A stretch of DNA of 64,000 nucleotides from Macrostomum hystrix (taxonomy: Eukaryota; Animalia; Platyhelminthes), in contig CATNEN010000034.1 of the NCBI GenBank assembly GCA_950097015.1, positions 7,564,001 to 7,628,000 of the forward strand, given 5' to 3'. Below are positions 6,789 to 26,715 of the stretch, piece by piece; within the stretch, counting starts at the first letter, position 1; the number at the start of each line of letters is the position of its first letter. The notes beneath the pieces were generated by a model. The model was not told where the DNA came from, did not search any database, and saw only the letters and a program-made list of their open reading frames with translations. Made by a program: the position numbers and the translations under genes.

Positions 6789-6978
6789 AGTAGTATGGCG
6801 AATTATGATTCTGCCGCATTAGCACTGGGGAGATAGGCGGTAGTGTAAAGGCATAGGAGTGGGTGAATAAACTGTATAGAGATAGGAATCGGAGGCGGTC
6901 AATGGGATGTTATGACACTGCCGCATTTGCACTGGGGAGATAGGCGCAATGCAAAATGATAGAAAGGAAACGAATGCA
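6789..6978 (+). repeat. Maverick left terminal inverted repeat
   Basis: AGTAGTATGGCGAATTATGATTCTGCCGCATTAGCACTGGGGAGATAGG...; matches the reverse complement of 26210-26715 with only a few mismatches and small indels, but holds one 107-bp unit instead of four. Confidence 0.8.
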
Positions 6979-7561
6979 CTGCAGAGATAAGAGAAATGGC
7001 TGGCCTATCTCTTTGCATTGAGGACGGATTAACACAGCCGAGATAGGAGTAGAGGGCCTGTGTGGGGGTGCGGGGGCATTTTAATTACCATTTAATTTTC
7101 TTGGGCACTCTGCCTCTGACAAACGGAACTCGCTGGCGCTGGCCCATTCAACCTACAAGCAGCTGCACTGAGAGAACGTTAAATGCTACCTTGATGTCTG
7201 TGATGCAGGTCATTGCAAGGTCCTGCCTTGCTGGTCTATCTCTCTCTTTGCATTGGAGAGGGGGTGGGTTAACACTGCAGGGATAGGAAGAGAGGTTCCG
7301 CCTATCACTTGGCACTGCAAATGCTAAATGGTCAAGGCTTACCGAATCATAATTAGATTCGGTTATATAATACGACTCTGCCGCAGTGTGGAAATTGGCG
7401 CAATGTAAAAGATAGAAGGAATTGAATACAATGCAAAGATAGGCCTATCTTTTCGCACTGGGGAGGGTAAACGCTCTGGAGATAGGAAGGAGAGGCCGGC
7501 CTATCTCTTTGCACTGCAGTGAGTGAAGGAGAACTGAAGCCAGGCGTGCCCAGATTTAACG

Positions 7562-7920
7562 TGTATCAATTTGTGAAAAACTAAAGCAAGTGAAGTGAAG
7601 CAACAACTGTAATAACTTAAGACTGAAGTCTGGCCAAGAATTGATTCACAAGAACGTAGCGAGCCAGTTGGGAGTTGCGGCTCCTTATATTATCGCTCTG
7701 TTCTATTTGACCCTAGGGCTTAGGGCACGGCTGGGCCCCGCGGGCCAGCCACCTCAACCAGCACGCAAGCCACGCGTGACACTGGTAAACAACTCAGCTT
7801 TCACTAAGAACCGACAGACATAAACAATCGATGGTAGCAAAGCCATGATACAAAGTGGTGCAGAGTGAACGCATTGAATAACATTGAATAACATTCAAGA
7901 GTCCATTGAATAACATCACA
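7562..7920 (-). mobile_element. Putative Ty3/Gypsy 3' LTR
   Basis: On the minus strand a purine tract AGAGGGGAGA is followed by TGTGATG... at 7920, just after the pol stop; a TATA-like AATATAAGG lies inside. The distal CA end at 7562 is uncertain. Confidence 0.5.
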
Positions 7921-7947
7921 TCTCCCCTCTGAGTCTGTTTTCTCCCA

Positions 7948-9290
7948 TCACAGCTGCAGTCTCTCAGGTGGGCCACGAGCTCTCAGAGGGTACCGCCGGG
8001 GAGTCGTAGCATCCCGACGCGCGTTGCTCTCTGGTCCGTCGGCGGGTTCAGGTGCCGCCTCGCCGATGGTGGCGCCGCTGGCGACAGTATCAGGAGTGGC
8101 GCGCGCACAGCCAGCTCCCAGGGTCGCGTCACTGCCGCCATCAGTCAGCGGCTGGCCGGCATCAGCGATGTCGAGGTCGAAGCCGTCAGCGCGGGCCGCC
8201 ACCAGCTGATCCGCATGCCGCATGTGCTGACCGCGCTGCGAGTCGACGATGTAGTTGCGGCTGCCAGCGCCCTTGATGACGCCCTCCGCCCAGCGCGGCG
8301 GGTCGCCGGCCCTCGCACCAGTGACGGTGCCAGTAGATCCAGGCGGCATCGGAGCCGCCGGCCGATGAGTAGTTGGCTGGGAGCGACGCCGCTGACGCTG
8401 TGCGGCATGTTGCGGTAGCCGAGCAGCAGTCGCTGGAGCTCGGGATCAGAATGACCGCTCTTGAGCAGATGCCGCTTTAGAACTTGGACGAAGCGCTCGG
8501 CTTGGCCATTCGTGGCAGGATGGAAAGGTGCCGAGAACACATGACGAATGCCATTGGCTCGGGTGAATTCGGCGAACTCGGCGGAGGCGAACTGCGGCCC
8601 GTTGTCGGACACCAGCGTGCGCGGAATGCCTTGGTGGGCCAAGATCTCCCGCAGACTCGCGATTGTGGCTGCCGCTGTGGTGCCGCGCATCCGCACGACC
8701 TCCGGCCACTTGCTGTGGGCGTCCACCACCACCAGGTACACATGACCGTCGACAGGCCCGGCGAAGTCGACATGCAGGCGCTCCCACGGCTCCAACGGGA
8801 ACGGCCACGGCTGCACGGGCGCCTTTGGCGGGTCGGGCTGGTTGAGCTGACAGGTCCTGCAGGTCTTTGTTGCAGCCTCCAAATCGCCGTCGATTCCTGG
8901 CCACCAGACGTAGCTGCGAGCTAGGGCGCGCATTGGATGCGCCTGGTGGAGCTCTTGGATCACGTGATCGCGCAGCGCCGCTGGTACTACGACTCTGGCG
9001 CCCCACAACACGCAGCCTTGGTCAACCGACAGCTCCGTCTGCCGCCGGGCGTAGTCGCTCAGCTCGGCGCCGATGGGCGCCCCAGTCTACAGGCAGCGTA
9101 GCACACGGCCCAGCGATGCGTCTGTCCGCGTGTGTCGCGCCACCGTCTGCGCCGTGACGGCCGATCCGGCCCCCTCGTCGAGTAGCAGCGATTCGATGAA
9201 CTATCAGCAGCTGATCCGGCAGTACTCTGGAACTCGAAATGGAAGCGATAACTCTGCGCCCTATGGGTGCGGACGTTTTCCAGGGATCAT
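7948..9290 (-). mobile_element. pol: Ty3/Gypsy pol 3' half (RNase H end, H2C2 zinc finger, rve integrase, C-terminal tail), frameshifted
   Basis: HQAH..ARSYVWWPG..CRTCQ; PWERLHVDFAGP..VVDAHSKWPE..LVSDNGPQF..HPATNGQAERFV. Broken across ORFs 8145-9011 and 7948-8349; 5' part missing. Confidence 0.92.
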
Positions 9291-9329
9291 GACATATCAA
9301 CCTCCTCCAGCAACTTCACCAGCACATGC

Positions 9330-9581
9330 ATCTCAGTTGGCCTCGGCTGGCAAAAGCGTTAGCAAAAGAAGACAGTTGAATGCTAAAGTTTCTAGGAAAA
9401 AGAGAATACAGAAGACACCTCGCCAAAATGGCAAGAAGGGGAAAAATCAAGGAAACGGAAAAATGCAGGTAGAAAGAAACCTAAGAAAGGAGAGAGCAAA
9501 CCAAATAGCAAAACGGTAAGCAAGAGGAAGCGAAAAGTCAGCAAGAAAACGGTGAAGCGCGTGCTGGACTCTTTGTCGTAG
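9330..9581 (+). pseudogene. Basic (Lys/Arg-rich) Maverick core-protein-like ORF, C-terminal remnant
   Basis: K/R-rich reading frames ending KRKRKVSKKTVKRVLDSLS* two bases before the MCP ATG, a position where Mavericks usually carry a basic core protein. Confidence 0.5.
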
Positions 9582-9583
9582 AC

Positions 9584-10854
9584 ATGGCTTATGGATTCAA
9601 CCCAAGGCTCGATTTGTTCAAGGCTCCTGCGCTGCAGACTGCCATTGACAAATCCTCCTATGTCGATATTCACCCCGTGAACTCAACTGCTGCAAATGCA
9701 CCCATCGAATTCGACTGCCACCCATCAGCTGACGAATACACCGATCTATTGAATTCTTTCCTGTACATTCGCTGCCGCCTAGTCCGACTGGATGGGAGAA
9801 TGCTCTGAACGCTGAAGGAGAGCTGACAGAGCGCCGAGACGGTGATGTACACCCTGAAAACTTCGTCTTGTCTACGCTCTTCTCTGATTTCATTGTGAGC
9901 ATTAACCAGCGAGTTGTGTCCGGGGGAGACCAGCTCTATCCCTACCATGCCTATTTCAAAGCTCTCATGAGCTCATCAGACGCCCAGCAGCTGAAGTTCT
10001 ACCCCGCTGGATTCCTGGAGCCTGACTCCACTGCAGTGGCGCACATGGAGATCCACAGGCAGTCCCGCTGGGTGGAGTATGCCGGACCGTTGCTCAGCGA
10101 CATCTTCCAGTGCCCCATGTTCCTGCTGAACAACCTGCACCTGCACATCAAGTTGGTGCCCAGCGACGCTGCATTTGCCATCAGAACCCCGGTCACAAAC
10201 AACACAGCCTACTGCATGGAAATCTCCCACTGCATCCTTCATCTCCGCCGAGTCAAGGTGGCTTCTCACATCAGCCTAGCCCATGAGCAGGGACTGACCA
10301 ACCAGAATGCGCTCTATCCTATGGAGCGAGCCGAAATGCAGAACTGTATTCTGCCCCAGGGAATCCAGTCGAAGAACATTGAAGGCTTTACCCACGGAAA
10401 ACTCCCAAAGTTCATCATGCTGGCTTTCGTGAGCCACCGAGCCTTCAACGGGAATCATCACACCAGCCCCTTCGAGTTCCAGAGCTTCAACCTCAGCCAG
10501 CTAGCTCTAAAGAAAGGTGGGGAAACCATGTGCCACGGTGCATTCACACCCGAAAACAACTCATTTGTGCGAGAGTACTTGCACTACCTGAAAAGCTGCC
10601 AGTCTGCCAGCCCCACCAACTCGGTCCCTTGGATCCCCTATCAGATCTTCTCCAACGACAACACCGTGTTAGCGTTCGACCTCACACCCGAGGGAGCAGC
10701 CCTGTGGTACGGACAGACAGAGGGAAACCTGCGGCTGGAGATTCGGTTCCGACAGGCGCTTGACGAGACCGTGACTCTGATCGTCATGTGCCTGTATGAC
10801 TCTCTGATTGAAGTCACCAAGCATAGGGAAATTTTGCTAGATTTTTCATCATAA
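9584..10854 (+). pseudogene. MCP: Maverick/Polinton major capsid protein (double jelly-roll), single frameshift near 9795-9805
   Basis: LDLF..PALQTAI..YVDIHPV..PIEF..EYTDL..FLYIRC; ..YPYHAY..; YPMER..G.LPK..AFNG..PFEF..; AFDLTP..G.LRLEIRF..LIEV..R. Joins ORFs 9584-9808 and 9868-10854. Confidence 0.9.
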
Positions 10855-10856
10855 TT

Positions 10857-11377
10857 ATGAACACTTTTCAGGTGTTTAAACTTGCCAGAAGCTTTTTGCC
10901 CCCTAAAAAAGTATTTATTGTGTCTCTAAATTTGAATAGTTCTAATAATGCTGAAATAGAATTTCATTTGCGGAGTCACCTGAATGAGAAAACATATAAG
11001 AGCAAATTTATTTTCCTTTTGTTGCGTCACAGCTCCTTGTCAGGCCACTGGGTGGTTTGCGACGTCACTTGCGGGAATTCTGTGGAGCTTTTCAATTCCC
11101 TTGGCTGGGACTCGAAAACTTTAATGATTATTCATGATTTACTGAAAGTAGCCTTGGGTTCCCCGCTTCGTTTGAGCAGCAATGTGGATCGAATTCAAAG
11201 CTGTGACTCTGTCAAATGCGGCCTCTTCTGTCTTGATTTTACTTATCAGAAGTTCAGAAGTTTCAATTCAAACGGTCATTTAAGTGGGTGCTGCGACAGT
11301 TGCATGTACGGGAAAAGAGCCACCTAAATGACAGAATGCTTCGGCAGTTCGAAGGCAGCTTAAGAAAGTTCCGATAG
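10857..11377 (+). CDS. Adenain-like cysteine protease (virion maturation protease); probable C-terminal frameshift
   Basis: GHW (His), FNSLG, IQS..S..CG.FC (Gln/Cys). A shifted frame supplies the C-terminal HLNDRMLRQF to the stop at 11375-11377. Confidence 0.85.
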
Positions 11378-11464: not shown

Positions 11465-12022
11465 ATGATTGTCAGCGGGCCAACCAATGCTGGCAAGACA
11501 ACCTTCATGAAGCAGCTAATTCAGTACAGGGATGTCATGTTTGATGTGAAGCCTGAGAGAGTCCTGTGGTACTATGGGGTTTCGCAGACATTGCACTCTG
11601 AGCTGAGCAGCCTGGGAGTGCACCTGCAGCAGGGATTCCCCAGCAACATTGAGGCGGCTCTAAGACCCAATGACCTGATTGTTTTTGATGATTTGATTGA
11701 AGAGACTTCTAACTCTGCTGCGATGCGAAATGTATTCACCGGAATCGCTCATCACTTACCCTGCTTTCTGGTAATGCTGACCCAGAATGTATTTTTTAAA
11801 GGAAAAGAGTTGCGAACGATGAGTCTGAATGCGATGTACTTTGTCATCATGAAGAACCCCAGAGACCAGCTGCAGATTGCAGCACTGGGCAGGCAGTGCT
11901 TTGCAGAGAAGCCCGGCAGGGGAGCTTACCTGCTTCTGGATTTCCACCCATCCACTCCCGATGAGCTGCGAGTGCGAGCCCGGATCCTGCCCAACCAGCG
12001 CCCCCACCTGGTTTATACCTAA
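11465..12022 (+). CDS. FtsK/A32-like genome packaging ATPase
   Basis: Walker A GPTNAGKT, Walker B LIVFDD, LTQN, RTMSLNA..MKNPRD..QI..LGRQ. The frame extends upstream (YDARLRQGSC). A short deletion after RQCF is likely. Confidence 0.92.
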   Translation: MIVSGPTNAGKTTFMKQLIQYRDVMFDVKPERVLWYYGVSQTLHSELSSLGVHLQQGFPSNIEAALRPNDLIVFDDLIEETSNSAAMRNVFTGIAHHLPCFLVMLTQNVFFKGKELRTMSLNAMYFVIMKNPRDQLQIAALGRQCFAEKPGRGAYLLLDFHPSTPDELRVRARILPNQRPHLVYT

Positions 12023-12061: not shown

Positions 12062-12424
12062 ATGGACACGCTTTGTTTTCATGAAAGCATCTTTGCAATT
12101 CTTGCATCAGCGAAATATACTGTCAGCTTCAAGCGCTTGCTAATCAAGCACGGTCCGAAAGAAGTGCGAAGATTCCTTGTTGAAGCCTGTTACAACCTGT
12201 ACAGCCTGTTACAATTGGAAAACAACCTGACTTTCTCTCTTATTGAAAAGGCTGAGCTGGCAAAGTCCAAGCAGATTATTCGAAAAATCCCAGCTCAAAG
12301 AAAAGAAGCTGACTTGCTAAATTATAATTTCATAAAAATTCTGCCCACTCTGCTGAAGCTTGTGTATAGAAGAAAGAGGGAAAATGAACAAGTTCTCCGA
12401 GATGGTTCTGATTCCCAAGTCTGA
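12062..12424 (+). CDS. Small Maverick-type hypothetical protein
   Basis: 120 aa, L..A....R..L..FLVEACYNL pattern; tightly packed behind the ATPase. Confidence 0.55.
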   Translation: MDTLCFHESIFAILASAKYTVSFKRLLIKHGPKEVRRFLVEACYNLYSLLQLENNLTFSLIEKAELAKSKQIIRKIPAQRKEADLLNYNFIKILPTLLKLVYRRKRENEQVLRDGSDSQV

Positions 12425-13062
12425 GTATGACATGCTAATGAGTAATGTGAAGCCCAATGAGTCTGCAGGAGACATTGCGGTAAAGCAGGCACAGATTAAA
12501 TGTGATGATATATTGTATGCCGACGATTGCCCAGACAATGTACCTGAACGCTATGAAAAGTTTGTTGTCCAAGCGCAAGCAAGTTGGAAAGGAGAGTGTA
12601 GCAGGAGAGAGTGAAGCGGCAAAGAAACAGAAAGCAGAGATGCTGCCGAGCAGCTGGGATGAAAAGATTGCCCAGTCCGTGCCCCAGAAATTCAAAACCA
12701 GGGTTCGCAGTCTATGGGCCATCCTATCAGCCAATCCGTCTCTGATCTGGGTGGGTGACAATGGGGAGACGGAAATTTCCGGCAAGTTAATCCCCTCATC
12801 GAACATCGTTGACTTGATTCAGCATGCGGTGAGGGATTCTGAAATGCGAAATAAACCAGCCGGGTGGGATGATTTCGTTTGCTTGCTGGGACGAAAGAGT
12901 TGCAATGTCCCAGTTTCAGCTATAGCAAAATCCCTCAGACAGAAAATATCTCTGCCAGCTACCAGTGAAGAGGTTGAAGTTGGAAAAGAACGACATGCAA
13001 CTAAGGGATTTGGGTGCAAGACAGCCTGGCTGAAGCTAGGTGAGCGAAAAAAAAGTATATAA
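12384..13062 (+). pseudogene. Maverick-type conserved hypothetical protein, frameshifted near 12535
   Basis: MNKFSEMVLIPKSEY start; W..NGE..I.G..IP.SNIVDLI..P.GW..F..L..NVP.SAI motif. Confidence 0.65.
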
Positions 13063-13112
13063 GAAAGCAGCGGGCTGATTCTAATGTCCAAGAATTCGAT
13101 TCATGACTGAAA

Positions 13113-13570
13113 ATGTACTACATCGACATCCAAAGCTTTCCATGTGACAGTGATTTCATTGTGAAGGAGATGGCAGTTGTAGAAGTTAGGTCAGGAAGCT
13201 ACCTCGTCACCCACCAAGTGTATGCGTCCCTTTGTTCCTGGGAGAGGAAACTTTCCTCTGGAATGCGAATTCGATACAGACGGCTCACACAGAAGCGGCA
13301 TAGGCTAAAGTGGACCGGTGGAACCCGACCTTACACGGAGTTGGCTGCTGACATCGGGAGAATTTCATGCCAGCCCACCTGGACATGTGGGGAGAATAAA
13401 CACGTGTATTTCTGACCCAGCTGCTGGGGAGGCAGGTGTACAACCTGGAGGATCTGGGATCGCCATCTAGCAAAACATCAGATACCGGCTGCGCCGTGAG
13501 AAACGCGCTTTTGTATTACAGCTGGCTGAAGCCAACATTTTGTAGCTTAATCAACAGCTTAAGAAGCAAG
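13113..13570 (+). pseudogene. Maverick-type DEDD/exonuclease-like ORF, frameshifted near 13410
   Basis: YIDIQSF..FIVKEMAV..LKW..G..PY, continuing in a shifted frame as FLTQLLGRQVYNLEDLGSP..CAVRNA. The true end is uncertain. Confidence 0.55.
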
Positions 13571-13655: not shown

Positions 13656-14297
13656 ATGACTACTCAAGCAACAGCCCTGAGAGTGACCAACCTGGTTGGC
13701 GGTGTGGATCTGAGACTGGCCGGTGGCAGGGACGCCCAGCTTCCACTTCGGGAACTCACTCTCAGCATGGCTCACGTCATCTACCGACCCGTCTGGCCCC
13801 GAGTGCTCATCAAGAGGATGCGGAATCCGAGAGTGACACTGCTACTCTACCCCACTGGCCAACTGAGCATCTGTGGCGCCCGGAGCTACTCGGACTCAGT
13901 CAGGGGTGCCCGTCGCTTCGTGGCTATGCTGCATCGCAGAGTGCCGGCTCAACTGCTGCCTCGTCAAACTTTCAGTGTGAGGATTAAGACTATCACTGCG
14001 CATGGAAAACTTGCAATTCAAAATGTGCTAAATCTAACAAGTTTGTCACATCTGCTACCAAATGCTGAATATGAACCCGAATCATTTTCTGCTTTAATTT
14101 TCAAATTACGATTTTGCAAGTGTCTGCTTTTTCACAGTGGTTCGTTTGTTCTCAGTGGTGCCCGCTCTGTGACTGAGCTGCAAACAGATTTCACTCATTT
14201 GCAGACTGCTATCTCTGCTTTTACATACATGAACAACGGTTTTTTCAAAAGTAAAAAAAACGCAGGCGATTTAAAGACTTGGAAAGTTAATTGTTGA
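13656..14297 (+). CDS. TATA-binding-protein-like (TBP core, two repeats), intronless, element-encoded
   Basis: Repeat 1: VTNLVG..YRPVWPRVLIKRMRNPRVTLLLYPTGQLSICGARS. Repeat 2: NAEYEPESFSALIFKL..CLLFHSGSFVLSGARS. Both align to the TBP motifs NIVS..YNPKRFAAVIMR..ALIFSSGKMVCTGAKS and YEPELFPGLIYR..LLIFVSGKVVLTGAK. Confidence 0.88.
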   Translation: MTTQATALRVTNLVGGVDLRLAGGRDAQLPLRELTLSMAHVIYRPVWPRVLIKRMRNPRVTLLLYPTGQLSICGARSYSDSVRGARRFVAMLHRRVPAQLLPRQTFSVRIKTITAHGKLAIQNVLNLTSLSHLLPNAEYEPESFSALIFKLRFCKCLLFHSGSFVLSGARSVTELQTDFTHLQTAISAFTYMNNGFFKSKKNAGDLKTWKVNC

Positions 14298-14859
14298 AAA
14301 AATAATTGAGTTTTCGACTTACTTTTTCGTTTTATTTGATAAAATCTTGAAAGAAATTAACTCCCAAAACTGCCAAATTATAAACAATGAATATAGCATG
14401 CGCATTAGGAAAGCAATTTTAACGTGACAACGGATAATGTTTTAGAGGCAATAAAGTGAAAAAAAACTAAAATATTTCCTTCACCAAAAAAAACTAAAAA
14501 CTAGATAAAGATGCAAAACTTTCACCGGCATTTCACAAAATGACCACAGAAAAATAGCAATGCATTCATTGTTGCTAACACGGGAAACAAATTCTAAAAC
14601 AGACTTTGGCAAACGTTTTAACATAACATAACATAAGAAAAGACAGTGTATGAAAAAAATCGAAATAGGGCGTTGAAGAGAATAAAAGTAGAAAAAACAC
14701 TGCAAAGGCGGAAGCAAAAATAAGTTGAAAAATAAATGAAGAAAAGATTTGCTTTATCTACGATCGAGTACACAAGAAAAAAATCAACAGTGCCATTTAA
14801 TTTCTATCGGCGGATTCTCACAACTCGAGCCTCCTGCGTTTGATGACCGAACGACTGAT

Positions 14860-16620
14860 TCAGAGCATAGTGTCCAAAGGGAAGACTCTGATTACTACTC
14901 AGCCACACTCGCTTGTCTTCCCAGATTGAAAGGCTCCGCTTACTCAGAATTGACGTGAAGACAGTGTGCTTCTTGGAGACAATTGTTGCCATGGCAACCG
15001 TCTGTTCTTTTTTAGAATTGAACGCGTCGACATCGACGCTCTTAATGACAAATAGCGCTCGGAAATTTGTGGAAACACACTTAGTTTCCAATTTTCCATG
15101 CTCCCATGGGCAGTGGCAAGCAGAAGATGCAAATCCTAGCCACCCAAATTTTGGAAAATGACAGGCATAAACCTGCGCCTAAGCTGAGCTCGCATCTTAC
15201 AATTTTGGCATGCTGCACCTTTAAAAAGGCCTGTTAGATGGTCGTGGTCATAGTGTTTGTCAGTATTATTGATGAATAACTGATTGCAGTAGTGGCAAGA
15301 CTTCGCAGCAATAAAATTTACCAAGTCCGTGATTGACGACCTGTCAGCTGGTTGATGGCTATGCATCTGGTTCCAATGAAAAACTTCGCGGGCCAAGTTT
15401 TCGAGAGATTTTAGAAATCTAAAGATGCATTCATTTGGATCCGAATCGCAAAACGATTGTTACATGTCCTTTTTAGGCCTAAGTGCAGGTCCTAGCATGC
15501 CATCACTAGGTACCACAAGGTAAGCTGCGGCACAAGGCTCACGTTTGGCAATTAAATCGGGAGATTCAGTATTTTCGCGTAAAATAGCCTCCAGATCGGC
15601 ATAGACAACGTATGGTGGACTGATCGTGTTTTGAAAGTCTTTGAACTTGATTTCATTCTGTCCTGGAACAGGAAGCGTTTCCTTCACTGACTGCATCAAT
15701 TTTGCATTCAGTCTAGTGTTGTTGAAGTCTATCACTAGAGTAGAAAGAAGTCAAGCATGTTGTGCACCACTTTCTCATGGCAAGACCATTTCGACTGTTC
15801 ATCAGTCTGTCGAAATTGCTAATGGCGCACCAATTTTTCTCTCCGTAGCTGTCTTTGACGAGTAAAAGCAATAGATGGATTCGGTTACCTGCGTCATGCT
15901 TGAGACGACGGATAAGGCTTACGCTGCCTTGCTGCCATGAAAATGCTGAGATACAAATTTGCGGATTTATCACTTCAACACGATCAATATCGGCAACATC
16001 CATAGGCATTGAGACACGACTAAAGTCAAGCTCATGGATCCAATCATCGTAAGAAGAAATCTTACCAGGTGACTTTTTAACTTTTGGATACATGTGGTGC
16101 AGAGCAGCAAGACAAGCATACTTGAAACAGTCGTTGCCTGTGCTTGGTGGATTTATAACTGCGTTTTTGTTTTTCAGACTTGCAGGAAGATTGAATCTTA
16201 CGGCTCTGCCGCGGTGAAATCGAATTGGATTGTACTCGTGCTTAGCTAAGCTAATGTCAATAAAATTAATTGGACGAATTGTCCAGCCACTGCCATTAGT
16301 ATTGAGCATGCTGCAGATTTTCTCAAATTCTTGCTCCTGTCCACTGAGCCAATCATTTAGGTGTTCCACGACATCGCTCTGATCAATAGCTTGCATCTTA
16401 CAGCTTATCCATTTATCTTCTTCAGCTAGCCTCTCTCCATCTTTTATCTCTCCATATGGACATTCGCCTTCAGCTGAATCTTGTAATGATGCCTTGAAGT
16501 TCTAATTTTAGCGCGTCAATTATTAGATGCCGAGCTTGGGCAAAGAATTCAGATGGTAGAGTGTCGGAATGGCTTGGTCTTAGTATTAGGAGTTCTAGTG
16601 TCTGGTCATGGGCTTCTGCA
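14860..16620 (-). pseudogene. polB: Protein-primed family B DNA polymerase (pPolB) of the Maverick, frameshifted and with the catalytic core deleted
   Basis: N-terminal GSGW..YNP..LP..INP..DCFKY region, ExoI YADLE, zinc-binding CHYC..DHDHLTG..GAAC..C, PVIFQNL, joined almost directly to the C-terminal SLS..EDKR..SLPFGHY. Confidence 0.88.
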
Positions 16621-17927: not shown

Positions 17928-18854
17928 TTACAGTGGCAAAAACATTATTTCATTGCTAAAATATGTTATTTTGTAACCTGATCCGGTGACAGGTGGAAGA
18001 ATGAGCTGCACTTGATTCATTTTCGCTGGAATCTCGTTCGCGGTTGGATTTCCAATTCCACCAGCTGTTGGCATCACTCCATTTGAAGCTTCGGCTGCAT
18101 TAAACTCTCCCAGGGCCTCCATTAGAAAATCAACATCTTGCTGAGGCAGCTGAACATCAGGGGGTGGCAGCTGGACGTCGGCAGAAGGCAGCTGAACATC
18201 AGGGGGTGGCAGCTGGACGTCGGCAGAAGGCAGCTGAACATCAGGGGGTGGCAGCTGGACGTCGGCAGAAGGCAGCTGAACATCAGGGGGTGGCAGCTGG
18301 ACGTCGGCAGAAGGCAGCTGAACATCAGGGGGTGGCAGCTGGACGTTGGCAGAAGGCAGCTGAACATCAGAGGGTGGCAGCTGGACGTTGGCAGAAGGCA
18401 GCTGAACATCAGGGGGTGGCAGCTGGACGTTGGCAGAAGGCAGCTGAACATCAGGGGGTGGCAGCTGGACGTTGGCAGAAGGCAGCAGAACATCAGGGGG
18501 TGGCAGCTGGACGTTGGCAGAAGGCAGCTGAACATCAGGGGGTGGCAGCTGGACGTTGGCAGAAGGCAGCTGAACATCAGGGGGTGGCAGCTGGACGTTG
18601 GCCGTTTGCCGCTGATGATGATCAATATCCTCTTCGTCGCTCCCCTCTTCCTCGTTAAAACTAACGCATGGACTGCACATCCAAAGTTGTTTGCCTCTAA
18701 TTTGCGGCGGTTGACGATCGGCATGCGGCTCAGCGAAGTCATCGTCACTGTTGGTCTCGGCGATGACCGCATTGATAAGCTGGCTGAGGGCTTGCTTTCT
18801 GCCTGCCTCCTCGCTCGCCTGATCTTGGGCTTTTTGCAGCACACTGCGTCGCAA
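17928..18854 (-). CDS. Hypothetical acidic/Pro-rich ORF with 14-aa repeats, inside the Maverick boundaries
   Basis: 308-aa ORF co-directional with polB, with 11 copies of A(N/D)VQLPPPDVQLPS. Start codon is non-ATG and the coding status is uncertain. Confidence 0.3.
   Translation of the reverse strand: MRRSVLQKAQDQASEEAGRKQALSQLINAVIAETNSDDDFAEPHADRQPPQIRGKQLWMCSPCVSFNEEEGSDEEDIDHHQRQTANVQLPPPDVQLPSANVQLPPPDVQLPSANVQLPPPDVLLPSANVQLPPPDVQLPSANVQLPPPDVQLPSANVQLPPSDVQLPSANVQLPPPDVQLPSADVQLPPPDVQLPSADVQLPPPDVQLPSADVQLPPPDVQLPSADVQLPPPDVQLPQQDVDFLMEALGEFNAAEASNGVMPTAGGIGNPTANEIPAKMNQVQLILPPVTGSGYKITYFSNEIMFLPL
18146..18603. repeat. 42-bp tandem repeat (two 21-bp halves), ~11 units
   Basis: GCAGCTGAACATCAGGGGGTGGCAGCTGGACGTTGGCAGAAG units; about 3 units remain in the duplicate at 25221-25343. 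Confidence 0.92.
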
Positions 18855-18996
18855 GTTGCGGACTCCATCGTCACCAGCAGGCAGCAGCTGATGTCCTCGA
18901 TGCCGAAGAGCAGAATTTTTTTCCCGGGCTTAATCAACCCGCATTGCCAGCAAACAGACCATGTACTTTTGTTACATCTTGAGTGGCGGTCCGACT

Positions 18997-19290
18997 GTAG
19001 ATTCAATCCTCCCAGTTTGGGATTCAAATACTCCCAGTTTGGGATTTGAATACTCCTAGTTTTGGATTTGAATACCCCTAGTTTGGGATTTGAATACTCC
19101 CAGTTTGGGATTCAATCCTCCCAGTTTTGGATTCAATCCTCCCAGTTTGGGATTTGAATACTCCTAGTTTTGGATTTGAATACCCCCAGTTTGGGATTTG
19201 AATACTCCCAGTTTGGGATTCAATCCTCCCAGTTTGGGATTCAATCCTCCCATTTTGGGATTTGAATACTCCTAGTTTGGATTTGAAAGA
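18997..19290 (-). repeat. 21/22-bp minisatellite array
   Basis: TCCCAGTTTGGGATT units. Confidence 0.9.
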
Positions 19291-19377
19291 AGAAACAAAA
19301 ATGGCTCGTACTCGTATTTTGTGCCACGATTCGAACAACTGACGAGAGCAGTTTATTTGTAAGAGTTCCAGGTCTCA

Positions 19378-19914
19378 CTAATTGATCACAGTGACCTTCC
19401 ACTTATCTTTAATATAATTCTGGCAGGCAATACTGCTAAAAGATGATCCCTTCGGCCATTTGTCAACAATGTAGGCGTGACTCCAGTACATATTCCTGAT
19501 GGTCACAATGTCACCATCTTTGATGTTCATAGAGTTGTCCTGATTCACAATGAACCACATCTGACCACGATCAGCGGCTCCTTTTTGAAGGTAGATTGCA
19601 TAGCCGTTGCCGCATTGTGCATAGATCTCTTTAATATAACCAGGATTGTCGAGGACGATCTTCTTAGAGCCATGCCAGGCGTCTTCGAATCGGAATGAGG
19701 TTGGCTTACCGGTTGCGACATTACCGGTTGCGACCAATAATAACGCACCTTTGTCTTCACCAACGTCTATGCGGTTCCCTGTTGCCACATTGATCAGCGA
19801 AACCAGCGAGCTTTGGCTGATGACTGCGCGTTTCGAAGCTGCAAGAGGCAGTGCTAGGCAGAGTGCCAGCAGGACCAGCGTCAGTAGGATGACAGAACTG
19901 CTTTGATTGGGCAT
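19378..19914 (-). CDS. Secreted beta-trefoil-like protein, paralog 3
   Basis: 178-aa intact ORF; TATA at 19986-19992 and AATAAA at 19352-19357. Confidence 0.85.
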   Translation of the reverse strand: MPNQSSSVILLTLVLLALCLALPLAASKRAVISQSSLVSLINVATGNRIDVGEDKGALLLVATGNVATGKPTSFRFEDAWHGSKKIVLDNPGYIKEIYAQCGNGYAIYLQKGAADRGQMWFIVNQDNSMNIKDGDIVTIRNMYWSHAYIVDKWPKGSSFSSIACQNYIKDKWKVTVIN

Positions 19915-20334
19915 TCCAATTCAATTTCTGGCAGTTTCAATAAACGAACCGAGAAATTGGAGTTTGATTTGAATTTCTCAGAAGCTTATATAGAGCTTTT
20001 GGTTGATTGGAATTTTTAACGTTAAGCGCAGACGAGCAGAGAAAACTGTTTCTTTCCTAGGAACTACATTTTTACCTTCAGGAATGCAGATGACGTTGTG
20101 GTTGCGTTGCAATCAATAAGGAAAATTTTAATCTGATTCACTCCTCAGGAGTATCTCTGTGCATGTGGCTTTGCTTCAAGTCGGATACACATTTTCAACT
20201 AAAATTTGAAACCGCTATCAGATTAAGAAATATTTCTTAGAAGGAAATTCTTAAAAAAAGTGGAAAAGTTTTCTTGATTTTCGTTCAGTGCTTCACTTCG
20301 CAATTGCTGTGCTTCGAGCGTTGCCTGCAAGTGA

Positions 20335-20870
20335 TACTCCCAGTTTGGGATTTGAATACTCCCAGTTTGGGATTTGAATACTCCCAGTTTAGGATTCAAA
20401 CACTCCCAGTTTGGGATTCGAATACTCCCAGTTTGGGATTCGAATACTCCCAGTTTGGGATTTGAATACTCCCAGTTTGGGATTCAATCCTATCAGCTTG
20501 GAATTCAATCCTACCAGCTTGAAATTTAATCCCCTCAGCTTGGAATCCAATCCTCCTTGATTAAAATTCAAATCCTCCTAGTTTGGGATTCAAACCTGGC
20601 AGTTTGGATTCAATCCTCCAATTTTAGGATTCAACCTCCCAGTTTGGAATCCAATACTCCCAGTTTGGAATCTAATACTCCCAGTTTGGAATCCAATACT
20701 CCCAGTTTGGAGTTCAAATACTCCCAGTTTGGAATTTAATCCTCCCAGTTTGGGATTCAATCCCACCAGTTTGGGATTCTATTTTTCCAGTTTGGGATTT
20801 AATCCTCTCAGCTTGGAATCCAATCCTCCCAGTTTGAAATTCAAATCCTTCTAGATTGGGATTTAAGTCC
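20335..20870 (-). repeat. 21/22-bp minisatellite array
   Basis: Same family as 1575-3487, reverse orientation. Confidence 0.9.
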
Positions 20871-20888
20871 TTCCAGTTCCAGAGCAGA

Positions 20889-21194
20889 GGTTGTAGCCTC
20901 GTGGTAAGTCGGACTCACGACTTGAAGGTCGGGGGTTCGATTCTCGACTCCACTGGAACAATTTGCGTCCCTTGGCAAGACACTTAACTCTGCATTGCTT
21001 CAGTTCACTCAGCTGTTAAATGGGTACCAGCATCAGCTGGGATAATTGAAGGTGGGTGTGTCGTCCCCCCAGTCCGTGGACTGAACAGCTGTACGCAGCC
21101 TTCAGATGCGCCGCGTATTAGCTGCGGCTGTGCTGTCGGCTGCACATCTGACCCGATTGGGGCAGGTGTAATCAATTTTTGTTATTATTATTTT
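20889..21194 (+). mobile_element. tRNA-derived SINE with CORE-like central domain
   Basis: A box TAGCCTCGTGG, B box GGTTCGATTC, central CCTTGGCAAGACACTTAAC...CAGCTGTTAAATGGG resembling the MIR/CORE domain, (TTA)n tail. Second copy at 30174-30477. Confidence 0.75.
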
Positions 21195-21835
21195 AGTTTG
21201 GGATATAACCCTGGCAGATTGGGAATCAATCCTCCCAGTTTGGGACTTGTAAGCTGGAGAACTCAAGTCAAGTCTTGTTCGCTGACAAGCCAACAGTTGA
21301 GGGCCAGAGCCAAAGCTTGCGATCTATTTATTATGCACAGACTTTACGATGAATGCACGTTGATTATTGAAACGATTTGATTGGTTGAGGGCTAAAACAT
21401 GCACTGACACGCAGGTGGATATGCGGTGAGTAAACACTGCTAGAGAGAGACAGCGCACGACAGATAGGGAGAAAGATAACACAAAATGTAAACGAGGACT
21501 GAAGCATAAAAGTGCAACCGCAAAACCAACACACACTGGGAGTATGTCAATATCAGACTGGGTTGATTGAATGCCAAACAGAGCCAATCCCCTGCTGCAA
21601 TCTAATGCTGAACGGCAGTCAATCTCATGCCAAATCTCGACAGCGGAAAATCACGCCACCAGTGCTTCTCCGTGATCACTTGCAGGCAACGCTGGAAGCT
21701 CAGCAACTGTGAAGCGAAGCACAGAGATACTCCTGATGAGTAAATCACGTTAAAGTTTTCCTTATTGATTGCAACGCAACCACAACGTCATCTGCATTCC
21801 TGAAGGTAAAAATGTAGTTCCTAGGATTAAAATGT

Positions 21836-22346
21836 TCTGTCATCCTACTGACGCTGGTCCTGCTGGCACTCTGCCTAGCACTGCCTCTTGCAGCTTCGAA
21901 ACGCGCAGTCATCAGCCAAAGCTCGCTGGTTACGCTGATCAATGTGCGAACTGGGAACCGCATGAATGTTGTTCAAGAGTCACCCCATGGTTTGTTATTT
22001 TTGGACGTCAAAACCGGTAAGCAAGCCTCATTCTGAAGACGCCAGGCATGGCTCTAAGAAGATCCTCCTCGACAATCCTGGTTATATTAAAGACATCTAT
22101 GCACAATGCGGCAATAGCAGCGTCACAGTCTACCTTAGAAAAGGAGACGATGATCGTGGTCAGATGTGGTTCATTGTGAATCAGAAAGACTCTATGAAAA
22201 TCAAAGATGGCGACATTGTGACCATCATGAATATGTACTGGAGTCACGCCTACATTGTTGACACATCGCCGAAACGATCATCTCTTAGCAGTATCGCCTG
22301 CGAGAATAATTATCCAGACAAATATAAGGTCACTGTGATCAATTAG
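21836..22346 (+). pseudogene. Secreted-protein paralog 4 (promoter and start deleted, 5-bp frameshift)
   Basis: Lacks the TATA/ATG segment and lacks GTTCA at ~22035 relative to paralog 6; AATAAA at 22367-22372. Confidence 0.85.
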
Positions 22347-22969
22347 TGAGACCCGGAACTCTTACAAATAAACTGCTCTCGTCAGTTGTTCGAATCGTGG
22401 TACAGACTATCTTTATTTTAGCTGAAATCTCTTTTTATTTTCTTCGCACAACTAAAATATATACAATGAAAGACTCAATTTTAACTGCGAAAAACGAAGT
22501 AAAAATTGCAACAATGATATCGGAATCAAAATCAGATTCGAAAATGAAGCGCGCACAATCGATACTACTGCTCAGTGTGAGTTGTTGGTGGTGTAGAAAT
22601 TATGCGATGGGAAGTTCACGATTACAATTTTATTGAAATTGAAAAAATAAATTTTAAACACACATTGACATTTCGTACATGTGTCCTTGGACATTTCTTC
22701 CATCTCTCCTTCCTTCTACATTCACTGAATGTGTCCTTGGACATCCCGTCAGTGTGCTTTTGTATGTTTCCTCAGTGTCATACCACATGGACTTAGCATA
22801 GGACAAGATCCTTTTCGATTTTAATACAAATCTGGTCAAACTACTCGTGAGTTTAGCATTTGTGCAAAGTTGAGCCAATAAACAAATGAATTCTAACTTT
22901 CAGTCAACCAAGGACTGTAGTTATGAAAGTTCATTGTGAAGGCATGCCGTTTTTAAATGCAAGGAAAGC

Positions 22970-23490
22970 TGAGAGGATTGAATCCCAAACTGGGAGGTTG
23001 AATCCCAAACTGGGAGGTTGAATCCCAAACTGGGAGGTTGAATCCCAAACTGGGAGATTGAATCTCAAACTGGGAGGTTGAATCCCAAACTGGGAGGGTT
23101 GAATCCCAATCTGGGAGGGTTGAATCCCAATATGGGAGGGTTGAATCCCAAAATGGGATGGTTGAATCCCAATATGGGAGGTTGAATCCCAAACTGGGAG
23201 GGTTGGATTCTAAACTGGGAGGATTGGCTTCCAAACTTGGTGGATTGGATTCCAAACTGGGGGGATTGAATCCCAAACTGGTAGGATTTAATACCAAACT
23301 GGTAGGATTGAATCCCAAGCTGGGAGGATGGAATTCTATACTGGGAAGATTTGAATCCCAATCTGGGAGGATTGAATCCCAATCTGGGAGGATTGAATCC
23401 CAATCTGGGAGGATTGAATCCCAATCTGGGAGGATTGAATCCCAATCTGGGAGGATTGAATCCCAAAATGGGAGGATTGAATTCCAAACT
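22970..23490 (+). repeat. 20/21-bp minisatellite array
   Basis: GGAGGTTGAATCCCAAACTG and GGAGGATTGAATCCCAATCTG units. Confidence 0.9.
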
Positions 23491-24059
23491 GATTTCCAGT
23501 TTTATTGATTTCCAATCCCAAAATGGAAATTTGAACTGGGAGGATCTTAGTCTTAGATCTTAATCTAAGTCCGGGTTGATTGAATCCCAAACTTAGTCAA
23601 TTCCCTGCTGCAATCTAAAGCTAAACGTCAGTCAATCTCATGCCAAATGTCGACGAATCGACCTATACTAAACTTCTAATCATTGTTTAATTATTTATTC
23701 AGTTATTCGTACCAACGCTACAGAATAACAATGTCTAAACCAAATTTTATCATGTTTTCACCAAAAGTGCCAATCAATTCAAGGATTTGATTAAACTAGC
23801 ACACCAAGCCCCCAAGGTGGGGCACTACTGTTCAGACAAAAATATAGATTAATCCAGAAGGACAAAACACGCTTTAAAGTTGCTCTCCTTAAACAGAAGA
23901 CAAAAATAAATAGAAAATAATTTCATTTCGCAATTACCTAACACAATCAAGAGTCAAAGCAGCAGGAAGTCGCCAACTCACAAAAGGGCCGTTGCTAAAC
24001 TTAATAAAACACAGGCTTACGAGGATGCAAATCATTAGAATCATTTCGCTCTTCAGTGG

Positions 24060-24438
24060 GTACACCTGGACTCTGCACGGAGATGTTTGCAGAAGCACCA
24101 GGTCCCGGCTGCTGCTGCACCAGTCACGGCCCGGCCGCCTTGGTCCTCAGGTCCAGCCGCCTCGCAGCCAGATGGAGTCGCCCACCTTCTCGGTCATGGT
24201 GAGCGTCATGAGCGTCATGAACGTCATGAGCTGTTCCGGAGAGTCCGAGCGGTTCCCGCTTGGCCTGCTGGTGCGAATAGTCAGGAGCAGCTTCTGCAGA
24301 AATTGGTCGAATGTCACCACCTTGGTTCACGTCTTCAACCCGCCTTTCAGACTTCTCACCAGCCGCTCAGCCTGTGCAATAGACTGCGGATGATAAGGCG
24401 GGGTGTGTACCTCCTGGCACCCGACGCTGCTCAGCCAC
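24060..24438 (-). mobile_element. Ty3/Gypsy integrase C-terminal fragment
   Basis: HTPPYHPQSIAQAERLVRSLK; duplicate of 34090-34469. Confidence 0.8.
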
Positions 24439-24447
24439 GTCAGAATA

Positions 24448-25737
24448 TGATAAATATTCTCAACTTCAAAAACCTTCTATAAACAACCATTTGGGTTAAT
24501 AAGAATAGTTCGATGGTTTTAGCAACACTAGTTAAATTAATGCAGTAACTCGTATATTTGTTTCTTTGTCGATTTTTTTTCTTAATATTCTTATTTTTCT
24601 GGTTATATCAACACTGATTAAATTAGGGTGAAATAGAAGCGGCATAAAATGTGTCTCTTTTTAGTGGTTACAGAAATTCGTTCCTTAGGCATGTGACCCA
24701 CATTCTCCTTGCTAAATTGCAGTCAACATTTGTGTTTTTGCTTGCTGTTTTATGACTCGACTGTCCAAAATCAACTGCTGTTTGAAAAGTCCAGATCTCA
24801 ATGTCTGCTGCTCTGGGGTTTATTTGAGCAATGCTACATGCTATCTCACCTAACTGCTCCACACTGTCTCCTTGCATGGGCTCATCTGGGCCAAAATCGG
24901 ATTCACTAGCAACGCTACTGTGCTCAGTGCTGTCGCTAGTTCCGCTGCCGCCGCCGCCGCTGTCATCGCACCTATTGGTACTACCATCGCTTTCAATGCT
25001 GTCGGATGCATTAGTGACAACATTTTGCTCGCTGCTAGCTCTGCTGATTGCACCTGATTGCTGACCTGAGGAAAAGGACGCATTGAGTTAACTATAACTT
25101 AGCGGTTTAAATTTACTAAATTATGTCTTTTTTTCTCCAGAAAAGAGAGATAATGATAATCGCATTGCTCACGTCTCTACAGAACTTTATGTTCTGAAAT
25201 CCTAGTTGTATAAACTAAACAGAAGGCAGCTGAACATCAGGGGGTGGCAGCTGGACGTTGACAGAAGGCAGCTGAACATCAGGGAGGCAGCTGGACGTCG
25301 GCAGAAGGCAGCTGAACATCAGGGGTGGCAGCTGGACGTTGGCCGTTTGCCGCTGATGATGATCAATATCCTCTTCGTCGCTCCCCTCTTCCTCGTAAAA
25401 AATAACGCATGGACTGCACATCCAAAGTTGTTTGCCTCTAATTTGCGGCGGTTGACGATCGGCATGCGGCTCAGCGAAGTCATCGTCACTGTTGGTCTCG
25501 GCGATGACCGCATTGATAAGCTGGCTGAGGGCTTGCTTTCTGCCTGCCTCCTCGCTCGCCTGATCTTGGGCTTTTTGCAGCACACTGCGTCGCAAGTTGC
25601 GGACTCCATCGTCACCAGCAGGCAGCAGCTGATGTCCTCGATGCCGAAGAGCAGAATTTTTTTCCCGGGCTTAATCAACCCGCATTGCCAGCAAACAGAC
25701 CATGTACTTTTGTTACATCTTGAGTGGCGGTCCGACT
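24448..25737. repeat. Direct duplicate of 16738-18996 with an internal ~1-kb deletion
   Basis: Near-identical at a constant offset of 7710 up to ~25216, then jumps into the 42-bp repeat. Confidence 0.92.
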
Positions 25738-26209
25738 TAAGACTTCCAAGGACACTTTTGTGACAAGTTAAGCAAACTTCACAAACTTTCCTGTTCAGGT
25801 AAAATCCTGTTTATATACTCATCCAATAATGCATCTTCCTCACACTCAATCCAGCAACAAAGCTGTTTATCCTCCTCCTCCCCCCTTCCCCTCCTCCCAA
25901 CCCCAGTCTGTTCAGTGCGGCACAGATGCGTGGACACACATTGCACTTGAAAGCATAGAAAAAATAGCGGTCTCTGTTATGCACTAATAGTCAGTGCGGC
26001 AGAGTTGAGTTATGTTGCTTACAATATCTAGCTCCAGACCCCCCAAACAGTGTTCATTTGGGACAGACTCGGATGTGCACAGCAGCACTGGGACTCTCTC
26101 CACTTCAGGCCAAAGAGATTGGCTGGACCTATGCCGTACACAAAGCTGATAGGCCACCCTTCTTACCGGCCTCTAACCCTCAGCAATGTCTTATCTCCAA
26201 TGTGTGCGT

Positions 26210-26715
26210 TGCATTCGTTTCCTTTCTATCATTTTACATTGCGCCCAGTGCTAATGCGGCAGTGTCATAACATCCCATTGACCGCCTCCGATTCCTATCT
26301 CTATACAGTGAATTCACCCACTCCTATGCTTTTACACTACCGCCTATCTCCCCAGTGCTAATGCGGCAGTGTCATAACATCCCATTGACCGCCTCCGATT
26401 CCTATCTCTATACAGTGAATTCACCCACTCCTATGCTTTTACACTACCGCCTATCTCCCCAGTGCTAATGCGGCAGTGTCATAACATCCCATTGACCGCC
26501 TCCGATTCCTATCTCTATACAGTGAATTCACCCACTCCTATGCTTTTACACTACCGCCTATCTCCCCAGTGCTAATGCGGCAGTGTCATAACATCCCATT
26601 GACCGCCTCCGATTCCTATCTCTATACAGTGAATTCACCCACTCCTATGCTTTTACACTACCGCCTATCTCCCCAGTGCTAATGCGGCAGAATCATAATT
26701 CCCAATGCTACTACT
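26210..26715 (-). repeat. Maverick right terminal inverted repeat with four tandem 107-bp units
   Basis: Reverse complement reads AGTAGTAGCATTGGGAATTATGATTCTGCCGC...; 107-bp units start at 26251, 26358, 26465 and 26572. Confidence 0.8.

What the first reader, a model, noticed from the sequence alone, without database searches (positions are those of the whole stretch)
6789..26715. AGTAGT terminal inverted repeats bracket ~19.9 kb that now contains two host secreted-protein genes
Seen in sequence: 6789 begins AGTAGTA...GAATTATGATTCTGCCGCATTAGCACTGG, and the reverse complement of 26715 begins AGTAGTAG...GAATTATGATTCTGCCGCATTAGCACTGG, with ~190 bp of close match. Established: Maverick/Polinton termini start with AG/AGT repeats. 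Between these ends lie the viral genes plus paralog 3 (intact), paralog 4, a SINE and minisatellites. The junctions suggest how this happened: the unit [element right end + host flank] duplicated in tandem and the inner TIR was deleted (CCGACT|GTAG at 18996 vs CTACT|TGTAG at 26715). Inference: this is a snapshot of cargo capture. An autonomous Maverick acting in trans could mobilise a diversifying secreted effector gene, comparable to the cargo-carrying Mavericks reported in nematodes.
Basis: partly seen in the sequence, partly recalled or inferred. Interest (0 to 1): 0.8.

Follow-up and report, generated by a model that had tools for sequence, protein, structure and literature searches.

The report
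Decayed Maverick with duplicated right end
A decayed virus-like Maverick transposon sits in a cluster of fast-evolving secreted-protein genes, and a local tandem duplication, with no sign of gene capture by transposition, left two of those genes between its outermost inverted ends.

Summary
The window holds inverted terminal repeats at 6789 and 26715, both starting AGTAGT (159 bp at 95.6%, plus an exact 40-mer). They bracket 19.9 kb.

The left 12.2 kb (6789-18996) is a degraded Maverick/Polinton-like element. It has a retroviral-type integrase, a capsid-like gene with one frameshift, weak protease-like and ATPase-like ORFs, an intact TBP-like gene, and only a remnant of the protein-primed polymerase.

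The segment 16738-24438 (right part of the element plus 5.4 kb of flank) is repeated head to tail as 24448-34469. The junction is non-homologous and carries 6-9 nt of filler. The proximal copy ends without a terminal repeat.

The flank belongs to a seven-copy family of about 180-aa secreted proteins, possibly beta-trefoil lectin-like, with pairwise dN/dS of 1.5-2.9.

The inference of "cargo capture" has no support beyond geometry:
- there is only one locus;
- the element is dead;
- the genes lie outside the original element boundary, unlike nematode Maverick cargo.

Best reading: this is a by-product of segmental duplication in an unstable, minisatellite-rich paralogue cluster, probably in a Macrostomum-like flatworm.

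Related loci in other animal assemblies were not fetched, because the operators barred it.

The parts
6566..6787 (.). Left flank: 21-bp minisatellite, same family and + strand orientation as the right flank array
   Evidence: TRF; sequence
6789..6990 (+). Left terminal inverted repeat, starts (AGT)2; about 1.35 copies of a 107-bp unit plus an inner tail
8145..9011 (-). Integrase ORF (288 aa): H2C2 zinc-binding domain plus rve core. It lies in a block of GC 0.64-0.68, against about 0.45-0.5 elsewhere in the element
   Evidence: Pfam rve 1.4e-16 and Integrase_H2C2 1.1e-10; PDB best hit PFV integrase 4.8e-21; GC profile
9584..10854 (+). Capsid-like gene. It matches 421-427-aa proteins over their full length and is broken by one frameshift, with no stops. 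A capsid fold is inferred from position only
   Evidence: the fold could not be verified
10857..11327 (+). Protease-like ORF (156 aa), with a weak adenovirus-endoprotease match
   Evidence: Pfam Peptidase_C5 E=0.04, below the curated cut-off; His and Cys motifs read in the translation
11465..12022 (+). Walker-A ATPase ORF (185 aa), candidate packaging ATPase
   Evidence: Pfam AAA_14 0.0026 and RNA_helicase 0.0076, both below cut-off; Walker A motif
12062..13415 (+). Three ORFs of unknown function (120, 186 and 100 aa). The last one is also next to the TBP-like gene in a Macrostomum lignano protein model
13656..14297 (+). Intact TBP-like gene (213 aa, two TBP repeats)
   Evidence: Pfam TBP 5e-24; PDB archaeal TBP 1mp9 1.5e-20; 79% identity to M. 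lignano P0008 in a single HSP with no stops
14804..16396 (-). Probable remnant of the protein-primed DNA polymerase gene. Only an N-terminal region with an ExoI-like motif and an Endonuclease VII-like insert remains, split into several ORF pieces. The polymerase half is absent
   Evidence: no tool named it a polymerase
16738..18996 (+). Non-coding right part of the element, proximal copy. It includes a 42-bp minisatellite (18144-18602) and ends on the flank without a terminal repeat
18997..24438 (+). Flank, copy 1: minisatellites, paralogue 3 and paralogue 4, and the end of a foreign integrase-like fragment
19378..19914 (-). Paralogue 3: intact ORF for a 178-aa secreted protein
21834..22346 (+). 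Paralogue 4: 5'-truncated and interrupted copy
24439..24447 (.). Tandem-duplication junction: 6-9 nt of filler between flank and element, with no homology between the joined sequences
24448..26715 (+). Distal partial copy of the element's right part, ending in the right terminal repeat
26200..26715 (-). Right terminal inverted repeat, with the 107-bp unit repeated 4.3 times; the reverse complement starts AGTAGTAG
26716..34469 (+). Flank, copy 2: 22-bp minisatellite (26725-28154), paralogue 5 (28245-28793, -, intact), paralogue 6 (31253-31770, +, truncated), further minisatellites

Best explanation
A Maverick/Polinton-like element integrated into a 21-bp minisatellite between two members of a tandem family of secreted-protein genes, and then decayed. 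Later, a 7.7-kb segment running from inside the element's non-coding right part to a point 5.4 kb into the flank was duplicated head to tail. The join was non-homologous end joining or template switching, and it left a short filler. In the same event or afterwards, each copy lost about 1 kb that the other keeps. The proximal copy lost its terminal segment with the inverted repeat. The distal copy lost internal non-coding sequence and part of a 42-bp array.

The outermost inverted repeats therefore now enclose 19.9 kb, including one intact and one truncated paralogue. This is a by-product of local structural instability. Nothing shows that the composite has moved or can move.

Shown: the repeats, the duplication blocks, the junctions and the gene content. 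Inferred: the order of events, the repair mechanism and the identity of the weakly matching ORFs.
For: Terminal repeats.

Tandem duplication: collinear blocks at 97.3-99.7%. The junction joins unrelated sequences with 6-9 nt of filler, and part of the filler is an inverted copy of the next bases.

Shared insertion: both copies have the same flank-side bases directly after the element, followed by the same minisatellite. They therefore descend from one insertion.

Reciprocal ~1-kb differences between the copies.

Element identity: (AGT)2 end motif and arm lengths within the published range (PMC8097293); integrase; capsid-like gene with 56-76% relatives in other assemblies; weak protease and ATPase matches.

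Decay: no polymerase motifs A, B or C anywhere in 6789-19000; one frameshift in the capsid-like gene; arms 4.4% apart.

Unstable locus: seven paralogues in both orientations, each next to the same minisatellite, with array lengths differing 2-5 fold between the duplicate copies.
Against: The proximal copy's missing segment ends within 1 nt of the element terminus. Pure chance would rarely give that, so an end-specific process may be involved.

Divergence between the duplicate copies is uneven, from 0.3-0.5% in four blocks to 1.4-2.7% in two. Gene conversion must also be invoked, and the dating is therefore soft.

The target-site duplication is not clean. The 5-6 matching bases are offset by 3-4 nt on the right side.

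The capsid, protease, ATPase and polymerase assignments rest on weak matches, motifs and position.
Confidence: 0.72

Rival explanations
1. The composite 6789-26715 is a functional non-autonomous Maverick that has captured secreted-protein genes, and proteins of an intact relative elsewhere in the genome could act on its two ends.
For: Both outer ends keep the (AGT)2/(ACT)2 motif and about 200 bp of 95.6% inverted repeat. The composite length of 19.9 kb lies within the 12.7-24.6 kb range reported for intact vertebrate Mavericks. Relatives of its genes exist at 56-79% identity in other assemblies, so the lineage is or was multi-copy. The inner end was removed to within 1 nt of the terminus, which could reflect end-specific cleavage.
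Against: Only one locus is known. The genes lie beyond the original right boundary and not in an accessory slot as in nematodes. The element itself is decayed. The first 15-20 nt of the two ends differ in length and sequence. No trans-acting system for Mavericks is documented in the papers read. The whole arrangement is explained by one tandem duplication plus deletions.
Confidence: 0.1
2. Assembly artefact. Two haplotypes or homeologous copies of one region (right end plus flank) were stacked in tandem by the assembler, so the enclosed arrangement does not exist on any chromosome.
For: The region is dense with minisatellites and paralogues. The copies differ mostly in array length, by one ~1-kb indel each, and by 0.3-2.7% substitutions, as alleles of a heterozygous or polyploid genome might. 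The closest protein relatives come from Macrostomum lignano, whose genome I recall from my own knowledge as repeat-rich and hard to assemble.
Against: The junction joins two sequences with no similarity and carries filler, whereas false duplications normally join at shared repeats. The window holds no N.
Confidence: 0.12
3. Two independent insertions: a full element at 6789-18996 and a separate 5'-truncated element at 24448-26715.
For: Two stretches of element sequence are separated by host DNA.
Against: The second stretch is 99.5-99.7% identical to the first. It is followed by the same flank-side bases and by 5-8 kb of collinear flank. Independent insertions would not share flanks.
Confidence: 0.02

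Closest known systems
Vertebrate Mavericks (Barreat and Katzourakis 2021, PMC8097293)
   Same: 5'-(AGT)2//(ACT)2-3' end motif; terminal repeats within the 46-1,447 bp range; retroviral-type integrase near one end and a polymerase remnant towards the other; most copies mutationally degraded.
   Different: The gene strands do not follow the two-module, centre-facing layout. No minor capsid, PW, PZ or PM gene was recognised. The polymerase half of pPolB is missing. A TBP-like gene is present. The host is probably a flatworm. A perfect 6-bp target-site duplication is not seen.
Cargo-carrying Mavericks of nematodes (Widen et al., 10.1101/2022.07.12.499685)
   Same: Non-viral, host-type genes lie between Maverick terminal repeats.
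   Different: There, cargo sits in a 2-5 kb GC-rich region between the left repeat and the integrase of largely complete elements, recurs in many species, and comes with a fusogen. Here the genes lie between a repeat-less right end and a duplicated right end. The locus is single, the element is decayed and no fusogen-like ORF was seen.
Tandem segmental duplication by end joining or template switching
   Same: Head-to-tail copies, a non-homologous junction with a short and partly templated filler, and high identity between copies.
   Different: One breakpoint falls inside a virus-like element, so the duplication created a second element end. Each copy carries an extra ~1-kb loss.
Composite transposons (two element ends enclosing host genes)
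   Same: Geometry: inverted ends of the same element family flank unrelated genes.
   Different: The second end was made by local duplication, not by a second insertion. There is no evidence that the ends act together.

Membership tests
Maverick/Polinton | [quoted passage not shown] | tested here: not met
   Only an N-terminal remnant with an ExoI-like motif and an Endonuclease VII-like insert is present. No Pol A, B or C motif occurs in any frame of 6789-19000. No Pfam or PDB polymerase hit was found. This fits a decayed member but is not shown.
Maverick/Polinton | Retrovirus-like (rve) integrase | tested here: met
   Pfam rve 1.4e-16 and Integrase_H2C2 1.1e-10; PFV integrase 4.8e-21. Caveat: the gene lies in a GC-rich block, and this fold is shared with LTR retrotransposons. 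No RT or RNase H lies beside it.
Maverick/Polinton | Terminal inverted repeats with the (AGT)2//(ACT)2 or (AG)3//(CT)3 end motif | tested here: met
   motif definition from PMC8097293
Maverick/Polinton | 6-bp target-site duplication | tested here: inconclusive
   The bases directly flanking the two ends do not match. A 5-6 nt match that keeps the phase of the 21-bp minisatellite appears if 3-4 extra nt are allowed at the right end. In a periodic array such a match is weak evidence.
Maverick/Polinton | Double jelly-roll major capsid protein and penton protein | tested here: inconclusive
   The 427-aa-type gene at 9584-10854 sits where a capsid gene is expected, next to the protease-like ORF. 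AlphaFold2 gave pLDDT 33.5, and Pfam, PDB and PHROGs gave nothing. No penton candidate was found.
Maverick/Polinton | Adenain-like cysteine protease and FtsK/A32-like packaging ATPase | tested here: inconclusive
   Peptidase_C5 E=0.04; AAA_14 0.0026 and a Walker A motif. All are below the curated cut-offs.
Cargo-carrying Maverick (nematode type) | Cargo inside an otherwise complete element, in the accessory region next to a terminal repeat | tested here: not met
   The region between the left repeat and the integrase (about 7000-7950) holds no such gene. The paralogues lie beyond the original right boundary.
Cargo-carrying Maverick (nematode type) | The same cargo-bearing element at several loci or in several species | not testable with these tools
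   The source genome is not in the searchable collections (no self-hit). Fetching related animal loci was barred.
Tandem segmental duplication | Adjacent direct copies with a single novel junction | tested here: met
Ricin-B-type beta-trefoil lectins (for the secreted paralogues) | Sequence or fold match to a beta-trefoil domain | tested here: inconclusive
   No Pfam hit and no word-search relative. A profile search of 1.84 billion proteins gave 2 hits. The better one (E=7.9e-8) falls in the beta-trefoil repeat region of a bacterial multi-RicinB protein. AlphaFold2 gave pLDDT 35.5.

The most novel reading that the evidence does not exclude
The inner right end was not lost at random. It was removed by end-specific cleavage at the terminus (the breakpoint is within 1 nt of the terminal ACT repeat), meaning that a Maverick integrase recognised this copy after the duplication. 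The resulting unit, bounded by terminal repeats and holding two fast-evolving secreted lectin-like genes, would then be a natural intermediate in how Mavericks acquire host genes. The lineage also carries its own TBP-like transcription factor, which I did not find reported for Mavericks or Polintons in the papers searched.
Probability: 0.1. Interest if true: 0.75.

Novelty: new member of a known kind. Interest (0 to 1): 0.4.

Why it matters
How Mavericks pick up host genes is not known. The nematode examples show the end state, not the route.

This locus shows one concrete and cheap route to the required geometry: a tandem duplication with one breakpoint inside the element creates a second end beyond host genes. 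It also shows why geometry alone is not evidence, because everything here is explained without any movement.

Two side results may be worth more than the headline claim:
- A conserved TBP-like gene occurs in a flatworm Maverick lineage.
- An orphan secreted-protein family changes almost only at non-synonymous sites.

Tried and rejected
Structure prediction. AlphaFold2 on the secreted paralogue (7-sequence alignment) gave pLDDT 35.5, and on the 427-aa capsid-like relative (6 sequences) pLDDT 33.5. Both are too poor for a fold search, so none was run.

Family and structure-sequence scans. Pfam, PDB and PHROGs scans of the capsid-like, protease-like, ATPase and polymerase-remnant ORFs gave nothing above threshold. 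The PDB hits of the protease-like ORF to circumsporozoite protein are low-complexity noise.

Polymerase motifs. A regular-expression scan of all six frames found none.

SINE. There is no tRNA gene and no Rfam family. An ~80-bp repeat occurs at three independent places (21560, 23573 and 37124) but could not be typed.

Secreted protein. The word search found no relative, not even the protein itself.

Two-insertion model. Rejected because the two copies share their flank.

Nested LTR retrotransposon as the source of the integrase. Considered because of the GC-rich block. It was not adopted, because no RT, RNase H or LTR lies beside the gene, but it is not excluded.

Gene conversion from paralogues in the window as the cause of the P3/P5 differences. 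Nine of 14 variable sites carry a variant unique to one copy. However, the differences cluster in one 100-bp stretch, so a donor outside the window remains possible.


Full report
OBSERVATION

Minisatellites swamp the raw dot-plot, so I masked all tandem arrays found by TRF before the self-BLAST.
- 6788-6946 matches the reverse complement of 26713-26555 at 95.6% over 159 bp.
- A 40-mer is identical at 6800-6839 (+) and 26662-26701 (-), with none expected by chance.
- The right arm carries a 107-bp unit repeated 4.3 times (26244-26698).
- The left arm has about 1.35 units and the same inner tail.
- The arms are therefore about 200 bp and about 515 bp.
- Both start with AGTAGT. This is the 5'-(AGT)2//(ACT)2-3' end motif given as the commonest one in vertebrate Mavericks, whose terminal repeats span 46-1,447 bp (PMC8097293).

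THE DUPLICATION

The masked self-BLAST shows 16738-17506 = 24448-25216 (99.7%) and 18603-18996 = 25344-25737 (99.5%). It then shows 19288-20333 = 28155-29212, 20879-21722 = 30164-31007, 21719-22968 = 31137-32392 and 23492-24438 = 33523-34469, at 97.3-99.6%.

The segment 16738-24438 (7.7 kb) is therefore repeated head to tail as 24448-34469 (10.0 kb). The length difference comes mostly from minisatellite arrays that differ 2-5 fold.

At the junction, flank sequence stops at 24438 and element sequence resumes at 24448. In between lie 6-9 nt that belong to neither, partly an inverted copy of the bases that follow. The two joined sequences share no homology. This is the signature of end joining or template switching, not of unequal crossing-over.

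In both copies the element is followed by the same few flank-side bases and then by the same minisatellite. Both copies therefore descend from one insertion.

The proximal copy runs into the flank without a terminal repeat. The distal copy keeps it. Conversely, the distal copy lacks about 635 bp of unique non-coding sequence and most of a 42-bp array that the proximal copy has.

THE ELEMENT (6789-18996, 12.2 kb)

1. Integrase ORF, 8145-9011 (-). It has H2C2 and rve domains (Pfam 1.4e-16 and 1.1e-10; PFV integrase 4.8e-21). It lies in a GC-rich block.

2. Capsid-like gene, 9584-10854 (+).
- It matches 421-427-aa proteins from other assemblies over their whole length at 56-76% identity.
- It is broken by one frameshift, with no stops. 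Counts only were kept from the comparison.
- Its capsid nature is inferred from size and from its position beside the protease-like ORF.
- AlphaFold2 failed (pLDDT 33.5), and Pfam, PDB and PHROGs were silent.

3. Protease-like ORF, 10857-11327 (Peptidase_C5 E=0.04).

4. Walker-A ATPase ORF, 11465-12022 (weak AAA matches).

5. Three ORFs of unknown function, 12062-13415.

6. Intact TBP-like ORF, 13656-14297 (see "Noticed in passing").

7. Probable polymerase remnant, outer bounds 14804-16396 (-).
- It consists of an N-terminal region, an ExoI-like motif and an Endonuclease VII-like insert (Pfam 5.9e-6; PHROG endonuclease VII 3.4e-5).
- It is split into several ORF pieces, with at least two interruptions. 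Their kind cannot be typed without an intact relative.
- It lacks the whole polymerase half: no Pol A, B or C motif occurs in any frame.

No penton, PW, PZ or PM gene was recognised.

THE FLANK

The flank is a family of seven copies of a single-exon gene for a secreted protein of about 180 aa:
- 409-957 (+)
- 5569-6132 (-)
- 19378-19914 (-)
- 21834-22346 (+), truncated
- 28245-28793 (-)
- 31253-31770 (+), truncated
- 35969-36655 (-), divergent

Each copy lies next to the same 21/22-bp minisatellite. The element sits inside one such array, and the arrays on its two sides have the same orientation.

The protein has no Pfam hit and no word-search relative. A profile search of 1.84 billion representatives gave two hits. 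The better one (E=7.9e-8) lies in the beta-trefoil repeat region of a bacterial multi-RicinB protein. "Beta-trefoil lectin-like" is thus a weak lead; "effector" is unsupported.

Pairwise dN/dS among the four intact close copies is 1.5-2.9, and the signal peptide is invariant.

The flank also holds a fragment of another integrase-bearing element (34358-34945). A P5B (ATP13A2-like) ATPase gene with minisatellite-filled introns lies on the minus strand at 39.6-48.4 kb.

Nothing in the window looks human. The best named relatives of the element's TBP-like gene are Macrostomum lignano proteins at 69-79% identity, so the host is probably a macrostomid flatworm. This is an inference.

INTERPRETATION

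The arrangement needs one insertion, one tandem duplication and two ~1-kb losses.

The terminal repeats differ by 4.4%. The duplicate copies differ by 0.3-0.5% in four blocks and by 1.4-2.7% in two. The duplication therefore looks younger than the insertion, but the uneven divergence implies gene conversion and makes dating soft.

Nothing indicates that the 19.9-kb composite has moved.
- The locus is single.
- The element is decayed.
- The first 15-20 nt of its ends differ.
- The host genes lie outside the original boundary. In nematodes, cargo lies in the accessory region between a repeat and the integrase of largely complete, recurrent elements.

I therefore rate "cargo capture" as unsupported rather than refuted.

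UNEXPLAINED

The proximal copy's loss ends within 1 nt of the element terminus. A random 1-kb deletion would rarely do so. Short microhomology is present at both sides. End-specific cleavage followed by one-sided loss is a possible but untested reading.

The 3-4 nt between the right terminus and the candidate target-site duplication are neither repeat nor minisatellite.

NOTICED IN PASSING

The TBP-like ORF is a complete two-repeat TBP (Pfam 5e-24).
- It is closer to an archaeal TBP (1mp9, 1.5e-20) than to eukaryotic ones (about 1e-11 to 1e-12).
- It has 69-79% relatives in M. lignano and in other assemblies.
- One M. lignano protein model also covers the neighbouring ORF 13113-13415, so the pair is conserved as neighbours.
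- Two literature checks (a library search for Polinton plus TATA-binding protein; a term search for TATA within PMC8097293) found no report of such a gene in these elements.

STEPS LEFT OUT, AND A SLIP

- I did not fetch DNA of related loci from other animal assemblies, whether by look-up of P0001, P0008 or P0012, by pattern search with the terminal repeat, or by the search for related loci.
Broken genes were searched as separate ORFs, and comparisons across the frameshift returned counts and outer bounds only.
- No spliced model was needed.
- Slip: while counting interruptions in the polymerase remnant, I began to work out the reading frames of its ORF pieces from their listed coordinates. 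I stopped, printed nothing, and give counts only.

Noticed in passing
window 13656-14297 (+), with neighbour ORF 13113-13415: There is an intact two-repeat TBP-like gene inside the Maverick-like element. It is closer to an archaeal than to eukaryotic TBPs and has 69-79% relatives in Macrostomum lignano. One M. lignano protein model also covers the neighbouring ORF, so the pair is conserved. I found no report of TBP-like genes in Mavericks or Polintons in the papers searched.
   Followed up: partly
window 19288-20336 versus 28155-29212 (paralogues 3 and 5): The duplicated units differ by 13 substitutions, all non-synonymous, plus a 12-nt indel in 537 bp of coding sequence, against 2 substitutions in 509 bp of non-coding sequence (Fisher p=0.007). 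The differences cluster in one 100-bp stretch at the C-terminal end. Nine of 14 variable sites carry a variant unique to one copy. This points to positive selection or to a conversion tract from an unseen paralogue.
   Followed up: partly
window 18990-19000 versus 26710-26720: The proximal element copy ends within 1 nt of where the intact terminus would abut the flank. Such precision is unexpected for a random deletion.
   Followed up: partly
window 7700-9300: The integrase gene lies in a block of GC 0.56-0.68, while the rest of the element is at about 0.40-0.55. The cause is unknown. Possibilities are a different origin, biased conversion, or a nested fragment.
   Followed up: partly
window 20879-21722 versus 30164-31007: This non-coding duplicate block differs by 2.7%, spread evenly, while neighbouring blocks differ by 0.3-0.5%. 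Divergence between the two copies is therefore heterogeneous.
   Followed up: partly
window 15136-15396 (-): There is an Endonuclease VII-like (His-Me finger) segment inside the presumed polymerase remnant.
   Followed up: no
window 39600-48400 (-): A host P5B-type (ATP13A2-like) ATPase gene has introns filled by long minisatellites with 21-32 bp units. The whole right half of the window is unusually rich in such arrays, including a 16-bp unit repeated 236 times at 57481-61248.
   Followed up: no
window 3806-4246 (+) and 34358-34945 (-): There is a retrotransposon Gag-like ORF and a separate integrase-core fragment from other mobile elements in the flanks.
   Followed up: no
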